Positions 6,770 through 26,000 of a stretch of DNA of 64,000 bases are shown piece after piece. Location of the stretch: contig OZ025678.1 in NCBI GenBank assembly GCA_964019335.1, forward strand, positions 310,001-374,000, given 5' to 3'. A model generated the notes under the pieces. The model saw nothing but the letters and a program-made list of their open reading frames with translations, made no database searches and was not told the DNA's origin. This DNA is from Diplonema japonicum (lineage: Eukaryota; Protista; Euglenozoa: Diplonemea). The stretch's first letter is position 1. Each line of letters begins with the position of its first letter. The position numbers and the translations under genes are program-made.

Positions 6770-7114
6770 CAGCCATCCCAGCATCACAGATGGCCTTGCG
6801 CTGCATCGGAGACCCTGTGTGGGTGAAACAGCCGATGCACTGATGAATAACACATCGTGGTTACTTGCTTGTGGTTGATGTGGGCCTTACAGTCCAAGGG
6901 TCTGTTGACAGGCGATGGAAGAGCTTGTTTAGACACAGATTATTTTTGACTTGTTGTCACGTTTGCTTGTTTAGTTGGGTGTTCTTTGTTCCTTAAGAGA
7001 CAGTACGGTCATGAGTACTCGGGCAACCGGGTGAGCGTCTCGAGACACTTCCAACCCACCTAGTGGGTGCGACCTTAGCAAGTCGAAAAGGAAGTGGAAT
7101 TAAAAAAAAAAAAA
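6770..7114 (+). ncRNA. Candidate structured RNA or retroposon (SINE-like) 3' end with poly(A) tail
   Basis: Consecutive hairpins, a three-way junction closed by CACTTCC/GGAAGTG, G-U pairs that favour the + strand, then a 14-nt A run. Confidence 0.35.
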
Positions 7115-12688: not shown

Positions 12689-13410
12689 ATGTCTCGGTAT
12701 GGGGAGAAGGACCCCGCGACTGACGATCAGATCGAGGCGACCGCACGGAGGGTGCTTGAAGAAATAGCAGCAGTGGGGACTGGGACTGAGGTCCAATTGG
12801 ATGAATACATAGCGGTATGGGGGCACCCTCTCTGTCTACTTATAATAGATTCTCGCCAAATATCGTCGAACTTGTGAAAAGCGGTCGAACTATAAGGAGG
12901 CAGAGCTGGTGCAACATGTGCTCAAGCAGCTGCGTCTAGAAGAGGAAAACAGGTGCGTGAAACGAAAACAAAATGAAAAAAAGAGGGGGGGTGAATTTTA
13001 AACTACCTTGGAAGCTCTCTGTATCTCCTGCTGTGGTCGGTTCCCACATCGTGCATCAGGTCATAAAGTTAGCGAGAATGTTTTGAGAAAAGAAAAAAAG
13101 CATTCTGTATCTCCTGCTGCGGTCGGCTCTTCTTGCATCGTGCATCAGGTCATAAAGTCTGCGAGAATATTGGCGTCCGGACAGGTTTCTTTTTTGGCGT
13201 TTCCTAGAAGCTCTCTGTATCTCCTGCTGTGGTCGGTTCCCACATCGTGCATCAGGTCATAAAGTTAGCCAGAATACTGACATCCCAGCCGAGTTTTTTT
13301 CATTTTTCTTTTTAACTGCCTTGGAAGCTCTCTGTATCTCCTGCTGTGGTCGGTTTCCACATCGTGCATCAGGTCATAAAGTTAGCGAGAAAATATTTGT
13401 ATCTCAGCTC

Positions 13411-13442
<32 letters not shown>

Positions 13443-14974
13443 GAAACTACCTTGGAAGCTCTCTGTATCTCCTGCTGCGGTCGGTTTCCACATCGTGCAT
13501 CAGGTCATAAAGTTAGCGAGAATATTCGAGATTCGTGGTTCTAAAAAAAGCATTCTGTATCTCCTGCTGCGGTCGGCTCTTCTTGCATCGTGCATCAGGT
13601 CATAAAGTCTGCGAGAATGTTGGCGTCCAGACAGGTTTCATTTTTAGCAGCTCCTAGAAGCTCTCTGTATCTCCTGCTGCGGTCGGTTCCCACATCGCGC
13701 ATCAGGTCATAAAGTTAGCGAGAAAAATTGGCATCCCAGCCGAGTTTTTTCACGTATCTCCTGCTGTGGTCGGTTCCCACATCGTGCATAGCGAGAATAT
13801 TCGGCGGGTTTCGTGGTTTAGAAAAAGAAAAAAAAAAAAAAGCATTCTGTATCTCCTGCTGCGGTCGGCTCTTCTCGGCTCATCGTGCATCAGGTCATAA
13901 AGTCTGCGAGAATATTGGCGTCCGGACACGGTTTCTTAACGTTTTTCCTGGGAAGCTCTCTGTATCTCCTGCTGTGGTCGGTTCCCACATCGCGCATCAG
14001 GTCATAAAGTTAGCGAGAAGGAAATAAATAGTTCGGTTTCTTAAAAACATTTCTGATACTCCCCCCCCCTTTTTTTTCTTTTGTGTTCAACTGTTTATCA
14101 AAACAAAAAAAAAAAAAAAACCACAGGCACGTCTACGCTCTAACACAGCAACAAGAGCTGGAAAGGCAGGGGCTGGAAGAAGCCCACACGCTGGAGTTTC
14201 AGAATTTCAATCAGGTACGTTTGAAAAAAAAAAAAAAAAAAAAAAAAATATTCTTTGCAGATATGGAACGAGAAGATCGACAGCTTTGAAGAGCACCAGC
14301 TGGAGTGCGAGGCTGTGATGCTTGAACACCACAGCATGGAGCTGACGAAGTTCCACGGCAGCATGACTGCCGAGGCTCCTAAGAAGGCGAAGTTCTCAAA
14401 GGATCTTCTGAACCTCCGGAAGATTCAAGAAACACTAGCCAAACAAAAAAACTATGTGGAAGCTCAAAAAGTCAAGATAAAGGGTGACCGATTGGAGTCT
14501 ATCGAACTCGAAAGGATCAACAGGGACAGGGGGGACAGGTACGCTAAGAAAGAATCACAGATATTGGGTAGACATCGGCAAGAGTTGCTTGCGATGAGGA
14601 AACGAATGGAAAGAGGCAGAATCGAGCTCGAAAGGAGGAGGAAAAAAGAACTTGAAATGCTGCTACAGAGGTACAACAATGTGAAGAGAGGGCTTCTCGG
14701 GCAACAAAACATCATCAAGGCTAAGACCGGTAACATGCTTCTAAAGCACGCAGCAAATAAGAAGACTGATGGTAGTGGATCGCAAGCCATCGTCACCTCC
14801 ATGAACAGCGGCACCTTTGGTCCAGGGTTAAAGAAGAAGGCGGACTCTAGCTACCCCTCAGCTACCGATGTTGTGAAGCAGATACAGCAGGAAGTTGCCC
14901 AGCAGCATGGAATGGCCGGAGAAGTGCCTTCCCCCACCGCAGCTGACAATTCTGGTACTTTGCCGCCTGTTTGA
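12689..14974 (+). CDS. Conserved-looking coiled-coil protein; host gene of the intronic guide-RNA array
   Basis: Exons 12689-12814, 12849-12952, 14127-14214 and 14261-14974 splice in frame through GT-AG introns (…DEYIA|ILAKYRR…EEENR|HVYALTQ…QNFNQ|IWNEK…). Confidence 0.85.
13012..14021 (+). ncRNA. Intronic tandem cluster of 10 single-hairpin AGA-box (H/ACA-like) pseudouridylation guide snoRNA candidates (7 type A including 1 truncated, 3 type B)
   Basis: Units at 13012-13080, 13098-13169(B), 13208-13276, 13325-13393, 13456-13524, 13548-13619(B), 13658-13726, 13754-13799 (partly deleted), 13840-13914(B) and 13953-14021. Fold: GCT/AGC (or GCA/TGC) lower stem, 10+10 nt pocket, CCTG/CAGG upper stem, AGA 14 nt below the upper stem. 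Confidence 0.75.
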
Positions 14975-17589: not shown

Positions 17590-20500
17590 ATGAAGCTCCT
17601 AGTTGAAACCGTGTTGCTCGTAATCTTCCTGTTATGCCACACAGTGGCAGGAGAAGAAGAGCCCGTCAAACCAACTGAGATGGTAGAGGTAACGAATCTG
17701 CAGAAGCTTGAACCTGATCTGGGGGGTAAAGTGAAAGCTCACCTTGTGGAAGATGCCAACCGTGCCGAGGCTGTCAAGGATTCCAAACCTGTAGAGACCC
17801 GTATCCTTGACAAGGAAGAAGCCATCCACATGAACACCCAGGTGGAGAGCAACAGTACCCAGGTAGTGGAGAGCAATAGTACCCAGGTAGTGGAGAGAAA
17901 CAGCACAGACAATACCTCTGAAGCAACTAACGCTACCAAAGAGGAGCTCAAGACGGGGATCCGCGTTACTGTTTTAGAGGATAACAGAGAAAACAGCTCG
18001 AACACCTCCGACTCGAACCACAAGGAGGAACCCAAGGTGGAGGTCCGCCACATTGTCAACCCCGAGGTTTCCAAAACCACTGCAACAGCAGCCACTGTGC
18101 AAGACCTCAAGGGGGAACCGAAGGTGGAGGAAGTACGCCACGTGGTGAATCCAGAGGTGTCCCGCGAGACCAGCAGGAAGGAGGAGCTCACAGCAGTGCA
18201 CCGGGTGACCACCGAGGAAGACACCGACAAGTCCAAGTCCCTGAAGACCGAAACTACAGACACCGCACGAGACAAGAAGGAAGAGCCGGAGGTACGCCGT
18301 GTGGTCGACCCGGAGGTGCTCGACAGGAACGAGCCCAATGCTAACTCCCGTGCGGCCCCTGAGGTGGCACTTGGGGCCACGGTATGGCTAAGAAAAAGAA
18401 AGAAAGAAAGAAAGATGAAGAATTGAGAGGGAAAAAAAAAGGGGGGGGGTGGTTCCCACATATTTATCACACAACACACAGTGGGCTTTCTCCCCGAACC
18501 GCGGTCGAAAGGGTCTCCCCATCGCGATGAGGCACGCGGCAGGCGACAGCAAACACGTTGCAGGGACCATCATAAGCAGGTACCAAGGGGAAGATGAGGG
18601 AAAGACTGGTCTCTGGATTGTGAAAACGGCTGAAGGTACCCATGAGGTGGCTTCAGACGACCTCAAGGTGCGGGTGGCTGAAGGGTATGGAAGGAGGGGG
18701 GAGAAAGAAATGATAACACCAACACCAACAACAGGCTTGAGGTGACGGACGGAACACACACAGGTGTGGTGGAGAGGGTCGGGTCTGGGAACGGGACGTA
18801 CGACGGGAAGATTATGGTGAAGTTCAACAACGTGGCGGAGGCGAAGCCTGTTGAAATGGGGGAACTCATGTACGTATCGAAGGAGGTGGTGGTATGAGTG
18901 TTTTCCCTCTCCCTCTCCCTCTCCCTCTCCCTCTCCCTCTCCCTCTCCCTCTCCCTCTCCCTCTCCCTCTCCCTCTCCCTCTCCCTCTCCCTCTCCCTTT
19001 CCCTTTCCCTTTCCCTTTTCCTCTCCCTCCCCCTTCTCTTTCATCCCAATCACAGTTCGAGTTGGACGACGTTGTCGACGTACGGGACAGCGAAGAGAAG
19101 GAATGGAAGGTCGGTGTTGTGGACTCGTTGGAACCGCTGCTGGTGAAGATTCGTGGGTGGCGCAATGCACACTCGTGGAACCAGGTCCGCCACCACGTGA
19201 AACCCGAGCCGAAGAAGGAGTCTGGTGGTGGTGAGGAACGCTCTCGCACTGTGTATGCAGTCGGGGACAAGGTGGAGGTGAAGGACGGGCTGTCGGGCTC
19301 CTGGCGGCACGGGACCGTTAATTCTATCGAAGGCGACGCAGTCAAGGTCCTCGTCGATGGGTGGAAGAGCCCTCACACCTGGAAGTTCATCAAAGTGGCT
19401 GAAGAGGTGTGCTATACTTCTTTGTTCTAACACACACCAGGGCCATGCAAGCGACGAGGGCAAGAGCCAAACCGAGAAGCCTGTATACACCTCCACCAAA
19501 GAAGTAAAACGCCAAGAAGAAAAGGACCAGGCAACGCCGCCTCCCACTGTGCCCCCTATCACAATGGCGAACTACACAACTGCGGTATGCAAGCGTGAAG
19601 AAAGTACAACACAAGCTAAACAACAACACAGTGGAAGGAAGTATGTCTGCATGCCATCTGTGACTTTACTGCTGATGAAAACTGCGTACCAGAGTACCTG
19701 TGCACAAACATCAGTGGGTGCTCCTGGGATGAGCTTGACACCCCACCTTGCAGGAAGAAGTTGAAGCTTGGTGATTCTGTGGGTTTGGCACCTGGAGCAC
19801 ACGAGCAAGGATCCCTCCGCGCTGGGGAGGTTGGGGTGGTAATTCAGATTCTTGACGAGGAGCAGCCGTACGAGGTGCGTGGTGGGTACAGCGATGTGTA
19901 CAGGTACAGGGAGGACGAGCTTGTTCCTGCTTGGAACAAAAACACAAAGGGGATTGATCCTACACTGATGAACCCAGTACTATTGAAGTGGAGGGGCAGT
20001 CCTTCCTTTGGTAAGGCTGCGGAAGAGCTGGAGGGGGCCATGATCGATCCTGGTCTGAAGACCCCACCTCCTGAGGACTGGGGACCCTCAGTAGCCGGTC
20101 CACTCACACCATCCCCACTACTTAACCACCGGGGCACAACAAGATATGACAGTATACCTAGGACAGCACCACCACCAGTATACACTCCTCCCCCTCAACA
20201 AGTAGTTACACTGCCCCCCCCTCCCCCTCCTACGTTGCCGCCGCCTCCCCCACCGAGACCTGCTGCAGATAACACAATTCCCAAGCCTGTATCCCCAGTA
20301 TCACGCCCACCAACCCCTACAACACCACCAACCCCTGCAACACCACCACCCATCACACGCGCTCGCGTCCCAGTCCCAGCACCCACACATCGGATTCCAG
20401 CGCCTACACTACGCCCGAAACCTCCAGCAGCACAGAGCGTTCCCACCATCAACATCTATGCACCGGAACAGCCCGACTTGTGCGGGGAGTACAAACTGCA

Positions 20501-23039: not shown

Positions 23040-26000
23040 ATGCAATTAGCATCTCCGAAAATTATAATACTCAGCTTCTTGCTATGTCACACGGTGGCGG
23101 GGGAATCTGTCAAGCCGGCAGAGGTGATGGGGCTGGCAAGTCCGCTAAAAGTCAACGACAGTGAAGTAGGCACTGAAGGAAACAGCACCGAGACGAACAA
23201 GACCCGTATCCTTGACAAGGAAGAAGCCATCCACATGAACACCCAGGTGGAGAGCAACAGTACCCAGGTAGTGGAGAGCAATAGTACCCAGGTAGTGGAG
23301 AGAAACAGCACAGACAATACCTCTGAAGCAACTAACGCTACCAAAGAGGAGCTCAAGACGGGGATCCGCGTTACTGTTTTAGAGGATAACAGAGAAAACA
23401 GCTCGAACACCTCCGACTCGAACCACAAGGAGGAACCCAAGGTGGAGGTCCGCCACATTGTCAACCCCGAGGTTTCCAAAACCACTGCAACAGCAGCCAC
23501 TGTGCAAGACCTCAAGGGGGAACCGAAGGTGGAGGAAGTACGCCACGTGGTGAATCCAGAGGTGTCCCGCGAGACCAGCAGGAAGGAGGAGCTCACAGCA
23601 GTGCACCGGGTGACCACCGAGGAAGACACCGACAAGTCCAAGTCCCTGAAGACCGAAACTACAGACACCGCACGAGACAAGAAGGAAGAGCCGGAGGTAC
23701 GCCGTGTGGTCGACCCGGAGGTGCTCGACAGGAACGAGCCCAATGCTAACTCCCGTGCGGCCCCTGAGGTGGCACTTGGGGCCACGGTATGGCTAAGAAA
23801 AAGAAAGAAAGAAAGAAAGATGAAGAATTGAGAGGGAAAAAAAAAGGGGGGGGGTGGTTCCCACATATTTATCACACAACACACAGTGGGCTTTCTCCCC
23901 GAACCGCGGTCGAAAGGGTCTCCCCATCGCGATGAGGCACGCGGCAGGCGACAGCAAACACGTTGCAGGGACCATCATAAGCAGGTACCAAGGGGAAGAT
24001 GAGGGAAAGACTGGTCTCTGGATTGTGAAAACGGCTGAAGGTACCCATGAGGTGGCTTCAGACGACCTCAAGGTGCGGGTGGCTGAAGGGTATGGAAGGA
24101 GGGGGGAGAAAGAAATGATAACACCAACACCAACAACAGGCTTGAGGTGACGGACGGAACACACACAGGTGTGGTGGAGAGGGTCGGGTCTGGGAACGGG
24201 ACGTACGACGGGAAGATTATGGTGAAGTTCAACAACGTGGCGGAGGCGAAGCCTGTTGAAATGGGGGAACTCATGTACGTATCGAAGGAGGTGGTGGTAT
24301 GAGTGTTTTCCCTCTCCCTCTCCCTCTCCCTCTCCCTCTCCCTCTCCCTCTCCCTCTCCCTCTCCCTCTCCCTCTCCCTCTCCCTTTCCCTTTCCCTTTC
24401 CCTTTTCCTCTCCCTCCCCCTTCTCTTTCATCCCAATCACAGTTCGAGTTGGACGACGTTGTCGACGTACGGGACAGCGAAGAGAAGGAATGGAAGGTCG
24501 GTGTTGTGGACTCGTTGGAACCGCTGCTGGTGAAGATTCGTGGGTGGCGCAATGCACACTCGTGGAACCAGGTCCGCCACCACGTGAAACCCGAGCCGAA
24601 GAAGGAGTCTGGTGGTGGTGAGGAACGCTCTCGCACTGTGTATGCAGTCGGGGACAAGGTGGAGGTGAAGGACGGGCTGTCGGGCTCCTGGCGGCACGGG
24701 ACCGTTAATTCTATCGAAGGCGACGCAGTCAAGGTCCTCGTCGATGGGTGGAAGAGCCCTCACACCTGGAAGTTCATCAAAGTGGCTGAAGAGGTGTGCT
24801 ATACTTCTTTGTTCTAACACACACCAGGGCCATGCAAGCGACGAGGGCAAGAGCCAAACCGAGAAGCCTGTATACACCTCCACCAAAGAAGTAAAACGCC
24901 AAGAAGAAAAGGACCAGGCAACGCCGCCTCCCACTGTGCCCCCTATCACAATGGCGAACTACACAACTGCGGTATGCAAGCGTGAAGAAAGTACAACACA
25001 AGCTAAACAACAACACAGTGGAAGGAAGTATGTCTGCATGCCATCTGTGACTTTACTGCTGATGAAAACTGCGTACCAGAGTACCTGTGCACAAACATCA
25101 GTGGGTGCTCCTGGGATGAGCTTGACACCCCACCTTGCAGGAAGAAGTTGAAGCTTGGTGATTCTGTGGGTTTGGCACCTGGAGCACACGAGCAAGGATC
25201 CCTCCGCGCTGGGGAGGTTGGGGTGGTAATTCAGATTCTTGACGAGGAGCAGCCGTACGAGGTGCGTGGTGGGTACAGCGATGTGTACAGGTACAGGGAG
25301 GACGAGCTTGTTCCTGCTTGGAACAAAAACACAAAGGGGATTGATCCTACACTGATGAACCCAGTACTATTGAAGTGGAGGGGCAGTCCTTCCTTTGGTA
25401 AGGCTGCGGAAGAGCTGGAGGGGGCCAAGGTCGATCCTGGTCTGAAGACCCCACCTCCTGAGGACTGGGGACCCTCAGGTGCCGAAAATGGAGGTGGCAC
25501 TGTACCGACTACTAGGAAGTACATGCCACCGCCAGTCCCACCACCAGTATACACTCCTCCCCCTCAACAGCCACCGCCAGTGCAGGCCATTCCGGGACCT
25601 GCTTCAAGCGATAAGAACCCAGCTCCCGTGACACCAATCATGGAGGCACCGAAGCAGTCGCCTGTTGCAACACCAACACGACCTCCTCTTCCGCCAACAC
25701 CTCCAGTGGCGCGCCCCACCCCGGCAGGGACCATTAAGATCAATCCTCCCACAGCACGACCCAAGAAGCTCACAGCACCCCCCGCAACAAGCATCCCCAT
25801 CATCCACATCTATGCACCGGAACTGCCCGACATCTGCGGTGAGTACACTTTGCAACCCAAGAACAAGCTGGTCAGAAGCATGTCGCTGTACATTTCAAAA
25901 GACTGCGCGACAGGCGAGTGCCAGATGTTCCTGTCACACGGTGGCTTCTGGATGGTCGGGAAGCACGACGGTGATGGGAAAGCGAACCGTGGTGTGTTCA

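What the first reader, a model, noticed from the sequence alone, without database searches (positions are those of the whole stretch)
13012..14021. Intron-encoded tandem array of ten AGA-box single-hairpin guide RNAs with covarying stems
Seen: ten ~70-nt conserved units separated by variable, homopolymer-rich spacers, all inside one intron of an otherwise tiny-intron gene. Each intact unit folds as lower stem / 10-nt pocket / CCTG.TGYGGT...ATC.GCA.CAGG upper stem / 10-nt pocket / lower stem / AGA. The lower stem covaries between types (GCT-AGC in A, GCA-TGC in B), TGT/TGC alternates against GCA (G-U versus G-C), and most variation falls in the apical loop while the pocket cores TCTGTATCT and TCATAAAGT stay fixed. 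Established: trypanosomatid and Euglena pseudouridine guides are single hairpins ending in AGA about 14-16 nt from the target U; here the distance is 14. Inference: this is an amplified snoRNA cluster hosted in a cis-spliced intron, an arrangement I do not know from trypanosomatids, which have almost no cis introns.
Basis: partly seen in the sequence, partly recalled or inferred. Interest (0 to 1): 0.88.

Follow-up and report, generated by a model that had tools for sequence, protein, structure and literature searches.

The report
Intron-hosted tandem pseudouridine-guide snoRNA genes
One long intron of a diplonemid protist gene carries nine intact copies and one broken copy of a small hairpin RNA gene that most likely directs one conserved pseudouridine in 18S ribosomal RNA; the RNA type is ordinary, but this gene layout is not yet described for this group.

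Summary
Window 13012-14021 contains nine intact units of 69-75 nt and one truncated unit, all on the + strand, and they occur nowhere else in the 62.5-Mb assembly.

They lie in a 1174-nt GT..AG intron (12953-14126) of a four-exon coiled-coil gene whose other introns are 34 and 46 nt. Exon-by-exon colinearity with three relatives' proteins and a spliced contig from a related organism confirm the intron.

Every intact unit has the same layout:
- a 3-bp lower stem
- a 10-nt pocket strand on each side of the upper stem
- an upper stem
- AGA 14 nt below the upper stem

Both pocket strands and the AGA box are invariant. The pocket pairs 4 + 6 Watson-Crick bp around U1204 of this genome's own SSU rRNA. 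This is the site and register of yeast 18S Psi999, guided by snR31, and snR31 is also the top, sub-threshold, Rfam match.

Units diverge less than spacers (3.7% against 13.5% substitutions, plus many spacer indels). Covariation is thin, at most two compensatory pairs. No RNA-level evidence could be obtained, and relatives' introns could not be fetched.

Verdict: a real H/ACA-like (AGA-box) guide-snoRNA array in an intron, a new variant of known layouts. This scan has already found similar arrays elsewhere in the same genome.

The parts
12689..12814 (+). Host gene exon 1 (ATG at 12689, 42 codons)
   Evidence: ORF. Aligns to residues 8-39 of P0001 and 8-42 of P0003. Covered by spliced contig X2 record 10.
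12815..12848 (+). Intron 1, 34 nt, GT..AG
   Evidence: Joint 12813>12848 (cut +1) in a contig of run X2. Exons 1 and 2 abut in the relatives' proteins.
12849..12952 (+). Host gene exon 2 (34 codons plus 2 nt of a split Arg codon)
   Evidence: 34/34 residues identical to P0001 residues 40-73. Covered by X2 record 10.
12953..14126 (+). Intron 2, 1174 nt, GT..AG, with an A-rich tract before the 3' splice site; it hosts the whole array
   Evidence: X2 record 10 joins 12953 to 14132 with exactly the 4 letters that correspond to 14128-14131. Exon 2 ends at P0001 residue 73 and exon 3 starts at residue 75, with the split codon AG|G giving the Arg at residue 74.
13012..13080 (+). Unit A1, 69 nt, AGA at 13075
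   Evidence: constrained fold -11.4 kcal/mol.
13098..13169 (+). Unit B1, 72 nt, AGA at 13164
   Evidence: -15.0 kcal/mol. Top Rfam match is the snR31 3' hairpin.
13208..13276 (+). Unit A2, 69 nt, AGA at 13271 (linker G>C)
13325..13393 (+). Unit A3, 69 nt, AGA at 13388
13456..13524 (+). Unit A4, 69 nt, AGA at 13519
13548..13619 (+). Unit B2, 72 nt, AGA at 13614
13658..13726 (+). Unit A5, 69 nt, AGA at 13721
13754..13799 (+). Truncated unit (A6t), probably a dead copy: no 5' stem I and no start of the pocket, and a 14-nt internal deletion that removes the 3' base of stem II and the 3' pocket
   Evidence: (L010: 100% over query positions 10-45 only).
13840..13914 (+). Unit B3, 75 nt, AGA at 13909 (extra 3 nt in the apical region)
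   Evidence: -15.9 kcal/mol.
13953..14021 (+). Unit A7, 69 nt, AGA at 14016
14127..14214 (+). Host gene exon 3
   Evidence: 27/29 residues identical to P0001 residues 75-103. Covered by X2 record 10.
14215..14260 (+). Intron 3, 46 nt, GT..AG, containing a run of 25 A
   Evidence: X2 record 10 jumps from 14212 to 14259, where the AG is ambiguous. Exons 3 and 4 abut in the relatives' proteins.
14261..14974 (+). Host gene exon 4 (237 codons plus stop). Coiled-coil protein with no Pfam domain, 83% identical to D. papillatum 'immunodominant antigen'
   Evidence: Single copy in the assembly.

Best explanation
The array is nine functional genes and one dead copy for a single-hairpin, AGA-box (euglenozoan H/ACA-like) small nucleolar RNA. 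It is carried in sense orientation inside intron 2 of a protein-coding gene of a diplonemid, a close relative of Diplonema papillatum whose intron features fit D. japonicum.

Inferred mechanism: the host pre-mRNA is transcribed and intron 2 is spliced out. The H/ACA proteins (Cbf5/dyskerin, Nop10, Nhp2, Gar1) bind each hairpin. Nucleases remove the A/U-rich spacers up to the protein-protected ends, about 1-2 nt before the lower stem and 3 nt after AGA. One splicing event would therefore yield up to nine guide RNPs of about 70 nt.

Each RNP opens its pocket onto pre-18S rRNA. The 3' pocket strand UCAU pairs with AUGA, and the 5' pocket strand GUAUCU pairs with AGAUAC. U1204-C1205 is left unpaired at the foot of the upper stem, 14 nt from AGA, so that Cbf5 converts U1204 to pseudouridine.

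Shown here: the sequence architecture, the intron, uniqueness in the genome, stronger conservation of units than of spacers, the complementarity, and the presence of a Cbf5 gene. Inferred: transcription as part of the intron, processing, RNP assembly and the modification itself.
For: - Architecture: all nine intact units share one layout. It runs AA, a 3-bp stem I, a 10-nt 5' pocket strand, stem II (4 bp, a 1x1 mismatch, 4 bp, a bulge, an apical stem-loop), a 10-nt 3' pocket strand, stem I, one linker nt, then AGA. With the pocket and box forced open they fold at -11 to -15.9 kcal/mol.
- Fit to the published trypanosomatid consensus (PMC2613932): the AGA box, 57-91 nt size, A before stem I, 1-3 nt linker, 5-11 nt pocket, 13-16 nt spacing, a perfect 3-7 bp stem next to the pocket, a loop of at least 5 nt and dG of -5 or lower are all met.
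- Constraint: homologous units differ at 13/351 aligned positions with 3 gap positions. Homologous spacers differ at 15/111 with 44 gap positions (Fisher p = 8e-4 for substitutions, 6e-21 with gaps). Variation inside units falls in the apical loop, the linker, the 3 nt after AGA, and stem positions that stay paired (one U-A/A-U swap in stem I, two Y-opposite-G positions, possibly one U-A/C-G swap in the apical stem).
- Target: in the genome's own rDNA, the only all-Watson-Crick site of 10 bp or more is SSU U1204, in GAUGA-UC-AGAUAC. Shuffled pockets reach this in 20 of 5000 trials.
- Same site and register as an experimentally assigned guide: yeast 18S Psi999 is guided by snR31 (PMC5699541). 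Its homologues Nc ACA5, plant snoR5 and human ACA8 use the ACA-side hairpin (PMC2780460). snR31's 3' hairpin is the top Rfam match among 4227 families, aligning GUAUCUCC, GGUCAU and the box with the same 14-nt spacing.
- Sole source: a pattern for this pocket and box hits only these nine units in 62.5 Mb, and the unit itself occurs only here.
- Context: the units are on the same strand as the host, inside a verified intron that is about 30 times longer than the gene's other two. A Cbf5-specific DKCLD domain is encoded in the genome.
Against: - No RNA evidence. No run on record as RNA holds the array, only Logan contigs were available, and contig depth cannot be interpreted.
- All copies are recent paralogues, so invariance of the pockets says little, and covariation rests on one or two events. 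The shuffle control reaches the observed covariation score in 6/500 trials, the count of covarying pairs is not above shuffles, and the RNAalifold covariation term is only -1.05 kcal/mol.
- Stem I is 3 bp, against 5-8 bp in trypanosomatids (PMC2613932).
- Unconstrained folding is not better than shuffles (z from -0.5 to -1.9).
- The Rfam match is far below threshold (12-18 bits against 45; E about 1).
- A loose model (AGA, 4-bp stem, 10 or more WC bp to rRNA) fires about 45 times in the rest of the window on both strands, so a target match on its own is weak evidence.
Confidence: 0.8

Rival explanations
1. A decaying or non-functional tandem repeat. A snoRNA-derived or merely hairpin-forming satellite amplified by unequal crossing-over inside a tolerant intron, producing no stable RNA and guiding nothing.
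For: All copies are recent duplicates arranged as a higher-order repeat. One copy is visibly broken. Covariation is minimal. Free folding is no better than shuffles. There is no RNA evidence. Loose target matches are common in background sequence.
Against: Units are clearly more conserved than the spacers that were duplicated along with them. Every stem substitution keeps pairing. The pocket, box and spacing reproduce the register of a validated yeast guide for a conserved pseudouridine. The genome has no other gene with this pocket.
Confidence: 0.1
2. The mature RNA is a canonical two-hairpin H/ACA snoRNA made of an A unit and the following B unit. The A unit's AGAAUA-type hexamer or the A-rich spacer acts as box H, and the B unit's AGA acts as the 3' box, giving about 160 nt instead of about 70.
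For: A-to-B spacers are the shortest (17 and 23 nt). Six of the nine AGA+3 hexamers fit ANANNA (sequences). B units are always preceded by an A-rich tract that the snR31 model aligns to its H-box region.
Against: The order A B A A A B A (A) B A leaves most A units without a B partner. The two A-to-B spacers are poorly conserved (12 matches in 24 columns). Each unit carries its own box at exactly 14 nt. Single hairpins are the rule in Euglenozoa (PMC2613932).
Confidence: 0.06
3. The RNAs are real but act on another substrate: U6 snRNA (the ACAGAGA region), LSU rRNA as a companion first-reader note proposed, or as a non-modifying chaperone.
For: Type-A units are perfectly complementary over 10 nt to this genome's U6 GAUACAGAGA, and type B gives 8 WC plus 1 G-U (U6 read). 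The five guide nucleotides that extend this pairing are not needed for the SSU site.
Against: No U6 uridine sits in pocket geometry; the best site has 1 + 4 bp. The best LSU sites reach 7 bp including wobbles. An alternative SSU site, U2055 (3 + 8 bp), needs a different fold and exists in only four of the nine units. SSU U1204 is available to all nine units in the conserved fold and matches a known conserved pseudouridine.
Confidence: 0.04

Closest known systems
Trypanosomatid and Euglena H/ACA-like (AGA-box) single-hairpin snoRNAs (consensus in Psiscan, PMC2613932)
   Same: One hairpin of about 70 nt. AGA instead of ACA. A before stem I, a 1-nt linker, 10-nt pocket strands, 14 nt from target to box, a perfect 4-bp stem next to the pocket, and genes amplified in tandem clusters (PMC2784804 for clustering in Euglena and trypanosomatids).
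   Different: Stem I is 3 bp, not 5-8 bp. The genes sit inside a cis-spliced intron of a protein gene, whereas trypanosomatid clusters lie between genes in polycistronic units. The array holds a single guide species in two subtypes, not a mixed C/D plus H/ACA cluster.
Yeast snR31, Neurospora ACA5, plant snoR5 and human ACA8 (SNORA8): guides for 18S Psi999 in yeast numbering (Rfam RF01257, clan CL00026)
   Same: The same rRNA site, the same short 4 + 6 bp register, the same pocket letters (GUAUCU before the CC of the stem, UCAU after the GG), the same 14-nt distance to the box, and use of the box-proximal hairpin.
   Different: Those RNAs have two hairpins with H and ACA boxes and are 190-225 nt long. 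This one is a lone hairpin with AGA. The Rfam score is 12-18 bits against a gathering score of 45, so family membership by sequence is not established; the resemblance may reflect only the shared target.
Intronic snoRNA gene clusters of rice and Drosophila (cited in PMC2780460 from Liang 2002 and Huang 2005)
   Same: Several snoRNA genes in sense orientation inside one spliceosomal intron of a host gene, so they must be released by processing of the excised intron.
   Different: Here there are nine near-identical copies of one guide, of the euglenozoan single-hairpin type, in an organism that also trans-splices and whose typical introns are about 40 nt (PMC12621601). The original rice and fly papers were not available to me, so finer comparison is from memory only.
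Other snoRNA arrays noted by this scan in the same genome (s1-864463, s1-856392, s1-858161, s1-864446, s1-865583)
   Same: A tandem single-hairpin AGA-box array (helix 69 guide), and mixed snoRNA arrays inside long introns of BiP, cyclin and carrier genes.
   Different: Those notes describe either intergenic homogeneous arrays or intronic mixed arrays. This locus is a homogeneous array of one H/ACA-like guide in an intron. I did not re-test those notes.

Membership tests
Euglenozoan H/ACA-like (AGA-box) snoRNA | Terminal box AGA, expected 3 nt from the 3' end | tested here: met
   AGA is invariant in all nine intact units. The position of the mature 3' end was not measured.
Euglenozoan H/ACA-like (AGA-box) snoRNA | Single stem-loop of 57-91 nt | tested here: met
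   Predicted units are 69-75 nt and adopt one hairpin fold.
Euglenozoan H/ACA-like (AGA-box) snoRNA | Stem I perfect, 5-8 bp (experimentally more than 2 and no more than 8) | tested here: not met
   Only 3 perfect bp (GCU/AGC or GCA/UGC). The next two positions are mismatched and are followed by one C-G. This is above the experimental minimum of more than 2 bp in PMC2613932 but below the observed trypanosomatid range.
Euglenozoan H/ACA-like (AGA-box) snoRNA | A one nt upstream of stem I; 1-3 unpaired nt between stem I and AGA | tested here: met
   AAGC at every 5' end. The linker is one nt, G in eight units and C in A2.
Euglenozoan H/ACA-like (AGA-box) snoRNA | Pocket 5' strand of 5-11 nt; target uridine 13-16 nt from the box | tested here: met
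   The 5' pocket strand is 10 nt. There are 14 nt between the last stem II pair and AGA.
Euglenozoan H/ACA-like (AGA-box) snoRNA | Perfect 3-7 bp of stem II next to the pocket; apical loop of at least 5 nt; dG of -5 kcal/mol or lower with the pocket open | tested here: met
   CCUG/CAGG gives 4 bp. Loops are 6-11 nt. Energies are -11.0 to -15.9 kcal/mol.
Euglenozoan H/ACA-like (AGA-box) snoRNA | Guide-target duplexes of 3-9 bp on each side of a uridine in rRNA | tested here: met
   4 + 6 Watson-Crick bp around SSU U1204 of the same genome. The chance rate is 0.4% per pocket, but the background of a loose model is high.
Euglenozoan H/ACA-like (AGA-box) snoRNA | Stable small RNA bound by Cbf5/Nhp2/Nop10/Gar1 | not testable with these tools
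   No RNA run holds the array. A Cbf5-type DKCLD domain is encoded in the genome.
snR31 / ACA8 family (Rfam RF01257) | Reaches the Rfam gathering score | tested here: not met
   17.9 and 12.4 bits against 45. It is the top match, but E is about 1.
snR31 / ACA8 family (Rfam RF01257) | Two hairpins with box H and box ACA | tested here: not met
   Each unit is one hairpin with AGA. Only model positions 106-223, the 3' hairpin, align.
snR31 / ACA8 family (Rfam RF01257) | Box-proximal pocket complementary to the 18S site of yeast Psi999 | tested here: met
   The pocket letters and register align to the snR31 3' hairpin and to the organism's own SSU U1204 (PMC5699541, PMC2780460). Equating U1204 with yeast U999 uses my recollection of the yeast sequence, which is consistent with Cm1007 in the PMC5699541 table.
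Intronic snoRNA gene cluster | Two or more snoRNA genes in sense orientation inside one spliceosomal intron | tested here: met
   Nine intact units lie inside intron 12953-14126 on the host strand.
Intronic snoRNA gene cluster | snoRNAs released from the excised intron, not from their own promoters | not testable with these tools
   No reads show RNA ends.

The most novel reading that the evidence does not exclude
All of the cell's copies of the guide for a universally conserved 18S pseudouridine depend on the splicing of one intron of one non-ribosomal, coiled-coil (probably cytoskeletal or flagellar) gene. The same intron-borne hairpins, through their 10-nt perfect complementarity to the U6 ACAGAGA region, might also bind U6 snRNA. 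That would couple or buffer spliceosome activity with ribosome modification, a dual-target intronic H/ACA-like RNA.
Probability: 0.04. Interest if true: 0.75.

Novelty: new variant of a known kind. Interest (0 to 1): 0.4.

Why it matters
Diplonemids are among the most abundant marine eukaryotes, yet I found no description of their snoRNAs in the searchable literature. The D. papillatum genome paper and the 2025 diplonemid intron paper never mention snoRNAs.

This locus gives a clean, testable example with three points of interest:
- The euglenozoan single-hairpin AGA-box design extends to diplonemids.
- It serves a pseudouridine site shared with yeast and human.
- In a lineage that kept cis-introns, such guides can be mass-produced from one intron, unlike in trypanosomatids.

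It also explains an outlier intron of 1174 nt in a genome whose median intron is about 41 nt. The RNA class, the target and intronic clustering are each already known, so this is useful annotation and a modest evolutionary data point, not a surprise.

Tried and rejected
- Rfam at gathering thresholds over the whole window gave no match.
- Free-energy z-scores of single units are not significant. This is expected for open-pocket RNAs and counts neither way.
- LSU and U6 targets, from the companion first-reader note, were rejected. The best LSU sites reach 7 bp with wobbles, and U6 has no uridine in pocket geometry.
- A site 40 nt upstream of the SSU 5' end (unit position 6785) ties at 10 bp, but it needs a G-U next to the target and lies outside the mature rRNA.
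- SSU U2055 (3 + 8 bp) needs a different fold and exists in only four units.
- The metagenome pattern scan returned 70 loci. About 60 are one gut-bacterial sequence matching by chance. The rest are unrelated singletons, including L040/L059 in an AT-rich contig with no array. These are bacterial or environmental contigs from gut metagenomes, not human DNA, and I did not pursue them.
- RNA evidence: no holder on record as RNA. The laid runs are contigs. Depth differences in X4 were noted but, following the tool's warning, not interpreted.
- The host protein has no Pfam domain.
- The rice and Drosophila intronic-cluster papers are not held.
- A trypanosome counterpart for this site was not found in PMC4855143.
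- I searched the host gene exon by exon and did not build or submit a joined coding sequence.
Full report
OBSERVATION

Window 13012-14021 holds ten copies of one conserved element, all on the + strand.
- Nine copies are intact and 69-75 nt long. They start at 13012, 13098, 13208, 13325, 13456, 13548, 13658, 13840 and 13953.
- One copy is truncated (13754-13799). It lacks the 5' end and has a 14-nt internal deletion.
- There are two subtypes: A (six intact copies) and B (three intact copies). They are arranged as a higher-order repeat of about 450 bp, (A B A A) twice followed by (B A).
- Spacers are 17-62 nt, variable, and rich in A or T runs.
- BLAST of a unit against the whole 62.5-Mb assembly finds only these ten places. 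A pattern that encodes only the functional letters (GTATCTCC, a gap, GGTCAT, ten N, AGA) finds only the nine intact units, with zero hits for the reversed control. So this is a local array, not a dispersed satellite or transposon fragment.
- Contigs from runs of two different studies reproduce the first units joined to exon 2 and the last unit joined to the unique 3' part of the intron, with no differences (X4 and X8).

THE INTRON

The array lies between 12953 (GT) and 14126 (AG). I translated the four exons separately (12689-12814, 12849-12952, 14127-14214, 14261-14974) and aligned each one on its own to three relatives' proteins. I did not build a joined coding sequence.
- The relatives were two transcriptome-derived proteins (P0001, P0002) and the Diplonema papillatum protein named 'immunodominant antigen' (P0003), all found.
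- The exons map colinearly and without gaps. In P0001, exon 1 ends at residue 39, exon 2 covers 40-73, the split codon AG|G gives the Arg at residue 74, exon 3 covers 75-103, and exon 4 covers 104-339.
- A 431-nt contig of a run from a closely related organism (X2, record 10) shows mostly third-position-like differences. It joins exactly these four blocks and skips 34 nt, the 1174-nt stretch, and 46 nt.

The 1174-nt stretch is therefore a cis-spliced intron of a gene whose other introns are tiny.
- Further context:
  - The host gene is single copy and has no Pfam domain.
  - The A-rich tracts before the 3' splice sites and the roughly 40-nt small introns match what is published for D. japonicum: a median intron of 41 nt and A as the most abundant nucleotide in the polypyrimidine-tract region (PMC12621601).
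  - The 83% identity to D. papillatum places the organism in Diplonemidae.

ANATOMY OF A UNIT

The alignment of the nine units, pair counting, RNAalifold and folding with the pocket forced open all give the same picture:
- AA, then stem I of 3 bp (GCU/AGC in type A, GCA/UGC in type B)
- a 10-nt 5' pocket strand ending in GUAUCU
- stem II: CCUG/CAGG, a C-U mismatch, UGYG/CRCA, a 2-nt bulge, and an apical stem-loop that differs between A and B
- a 10-nt 3' pocket strand beginning with UCAU
- the return strand of stem I, one linker nucleotide, AGA, and three variable nucleotides

Constrained energies are -11 to -15.9 kcal/mol.

I compared this with the published consensus for 100 trypanosomatid H/ACA-like RNAs (PMC2613932). 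Every criterion is met except one: stem I is 3 bp where trypanosomatids have 5-8 bp. Experiments in that paper required more than 2 bp.

IS IT UNDER CONSTRAINT?

All copies are young paralogues, so invariant pockets prove little. Two observations do carry weight.
- Units diverge less than the spacers duplicated with them. In homologous positions of the higher-order repeat, units differ at 13 of 351 aligned positions with 3 gap positions. Spacers differ at 15 of 111 aligned positions with 44 gap positions (Fisher p = 8e-4 for substitutions alone).
- The differences inside units fall in harmless places. These are the apical loop, the linker, the three nucleotides after AGA, and stem positions that remain paired.
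  - One stem I pair changes on both sides (U-A to A-U).
  - Two stem II positions vary only between U and C opposite G.
  - In RNAalifold's register, one more apical pair changes on both sides, from U-A to C-G.

Covariation is therefore real but thin: one or two events, an RNAalifold covariation term of -1.05 kcal/mol, and a count of covarying pairs no higher than shuffles. Unconstrained folding is also no better than shuffles, which is usual for RNAs with large open pockets.

TARGET

I located the rDNA of the same genome: SSU 2070 nt, 5.8S, and LSU, in a compact 6825-bp unit. I then scanned every uridine in it for pocket-type pairing.
- Best site: the only all-Watson-Crick site with 10 or more bp is SSU U1204, in the context GAUGA-UC-AGAUAC. 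It gives 4 bp to UCAU and 6 bp to GUAUCU.
- Chance rate: shuffled pockets reach this anywhere in the unit in 20 of 5000 trials.
- Other substrates: LSU sites are weaker, and U6 has no uridine in the right geometry.
- Match to a known guide:
  - This is the site of yeast 18S Psi999, assigned to snR31 (PMC5699541).
  - Its homologues in Neurospora, Arabidopsis (snoR5) and human (ACA8) use the ACA-side hairpin (PMC2780460).
  - Equating U1204 with yeast U999 uses my memory of the yeast sequence, but it fits that table, which places Cm at 1007, eight nucleotides downstream.
- Rfam: without any use of the rRNA, snR31 is the top match among 4227 Rfam families for a single unit. The alignment puts GUAUCUCC, GGUCAU and the terminal box in the same columns, with the same 14-nt spacing. 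The score is far below threshold (12-18 bits against 45), and the similarity may simply reflect the shared target. I therefore treat snR31 as a functional counterpart, not a demonstrated homologue.
- From general knowledge, not tested here: the site lies in the loop of SSU helix 24, the bacterial '790 loop'.

A control tempers the target argument. A loose model (AGA, a 4-bp stem at the right distance, 10 or more WC bp to any rRNA uridine) fires about 45 times elsewhere in the window on both strands. The target match counts only together with the other evidence.

MACHINERY AND EXPRESSION
- A Cbf5/dyskerin-specific DKCLD domain is encoded once in the genome.
- No run on record as RNA holds the array, and all laid runs are assembled contigs. 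Neither the existence nor the ends of a 70-nt RNA could be checked.
- In run X4, contigs made mostly of unique spacer have several-fold higher word depth than the exons. The tool warns against ranking contig depths, so I leave this unexplained. It could reflect collapsed copies or RNA accumulation.

RELATIVES
- My one metagenome scan, with a 20-base functional pattern, returned only chance matches, mostly one gut-bacterial sequence.

MECHANISM, COMPARISON AND NOVELTY

The most likely mechanism is given under Best explanation. In short, the spliced-out intron is a polycistronic precursor from which up to nine identical-function H/ACA-like snoRNPs are cut. Each guides Cbf5 to isomerise SSU U1204. 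This is the only source of that guide in the assembly.

How it compares with what is known:
- The RNA type is the known euglenozoan single-hairpin AGA-box guide.
- Clustering and amplification of such genes is known in trypanosomatids and Euglena (PMC2784804).
- Intronic snoRNA gene clusters are known from rice and Drosophila (PMC2780460).
- What is new is the combination: a homogeneous tandem array of this RNA type inside a cis-spliced intron, in diplonemids. I found no published snoRNA description for this group.
- This scan has already reported, on other DNA of the same genome, a tandem AGA-box array for helix 69 and several intron-hosted mixed snoRNA arrays. I did not re-test those notes. 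They make this locus one more instance of a genome-wide habit, not a singular oddity.

An unexplained detail is the 10-nt perfect complementarity of type-A units to the U6 ACAGAGA region. It does not fit pseudouridylation geometry.

VERDICT

My confidence that this is a real guide-snoRNA array is about 0.8, and about 0.7 for the specific target. I class it as a new variant of a known kind, of moderate interest.

Noticed in passing
window 13016-13026 (and the same positions in the other type-A units) against U6 snRNA in L026 (G000:C8:559647-559750, minus strand): The 5' pocket plus the stem-I flank of type-A units is perfectly complementary over 10 nt to the U6 GAUACAGAGA (ACAGAGA-box) sequence of this genome. 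Type B gives 8 WC plus 1 G-U. No uridine sits in pocket geometry, so this is not a canonical target.
   Followed up: partly
L024 (G000:C119:1-7200): The rDNA unit is very compact at 6825 bp. It holds SSU 2070 nt, 5.8S and an unsplit LSU match of 3480 nt, and leaves only about 790 nt between the LSU 3' end and the next SSU. At least five tandem units lie on a 33-kb contig.
   Followed up: partly
window 19063-19662 and 24450-25049: The two stretches are identical at 600 of 600 positions, 5.4 kb apart. This is a long exact duplication, found by accident in a control scan.
   Followed up: no
window 13154-13783, run X4: Contigs made mostly of unique spacer sequence inside the array have mean word depth of about 500-1000, against 151-295 on the host exons. 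Run X8 is flat. Either the assembly has collapsed extra repeat copies or X4 contains RNA in which the intron array accumulates. The tool warns against ranking contig depths.
   Followed up: no
window 14100-14126 and 14224-14248: Runs of 20-25 A sit just upstream of the 3' splice sites of introns 2 and 3. This matches the unusual A-rich 'polypyrimidine tract' reported for Diplonema japonicum (PMC12621601).
   Followed up: partly
L024 position 6975 (unit position 6785, 40 nt upstream of the SSU 5' end): A second 4 + 6 bp pocket match (UCAUGA-UG-GGAUAC, with one G-U) lies in the short 5' external spacer just before mature 18S. It is probably chance.
   Followed up: no
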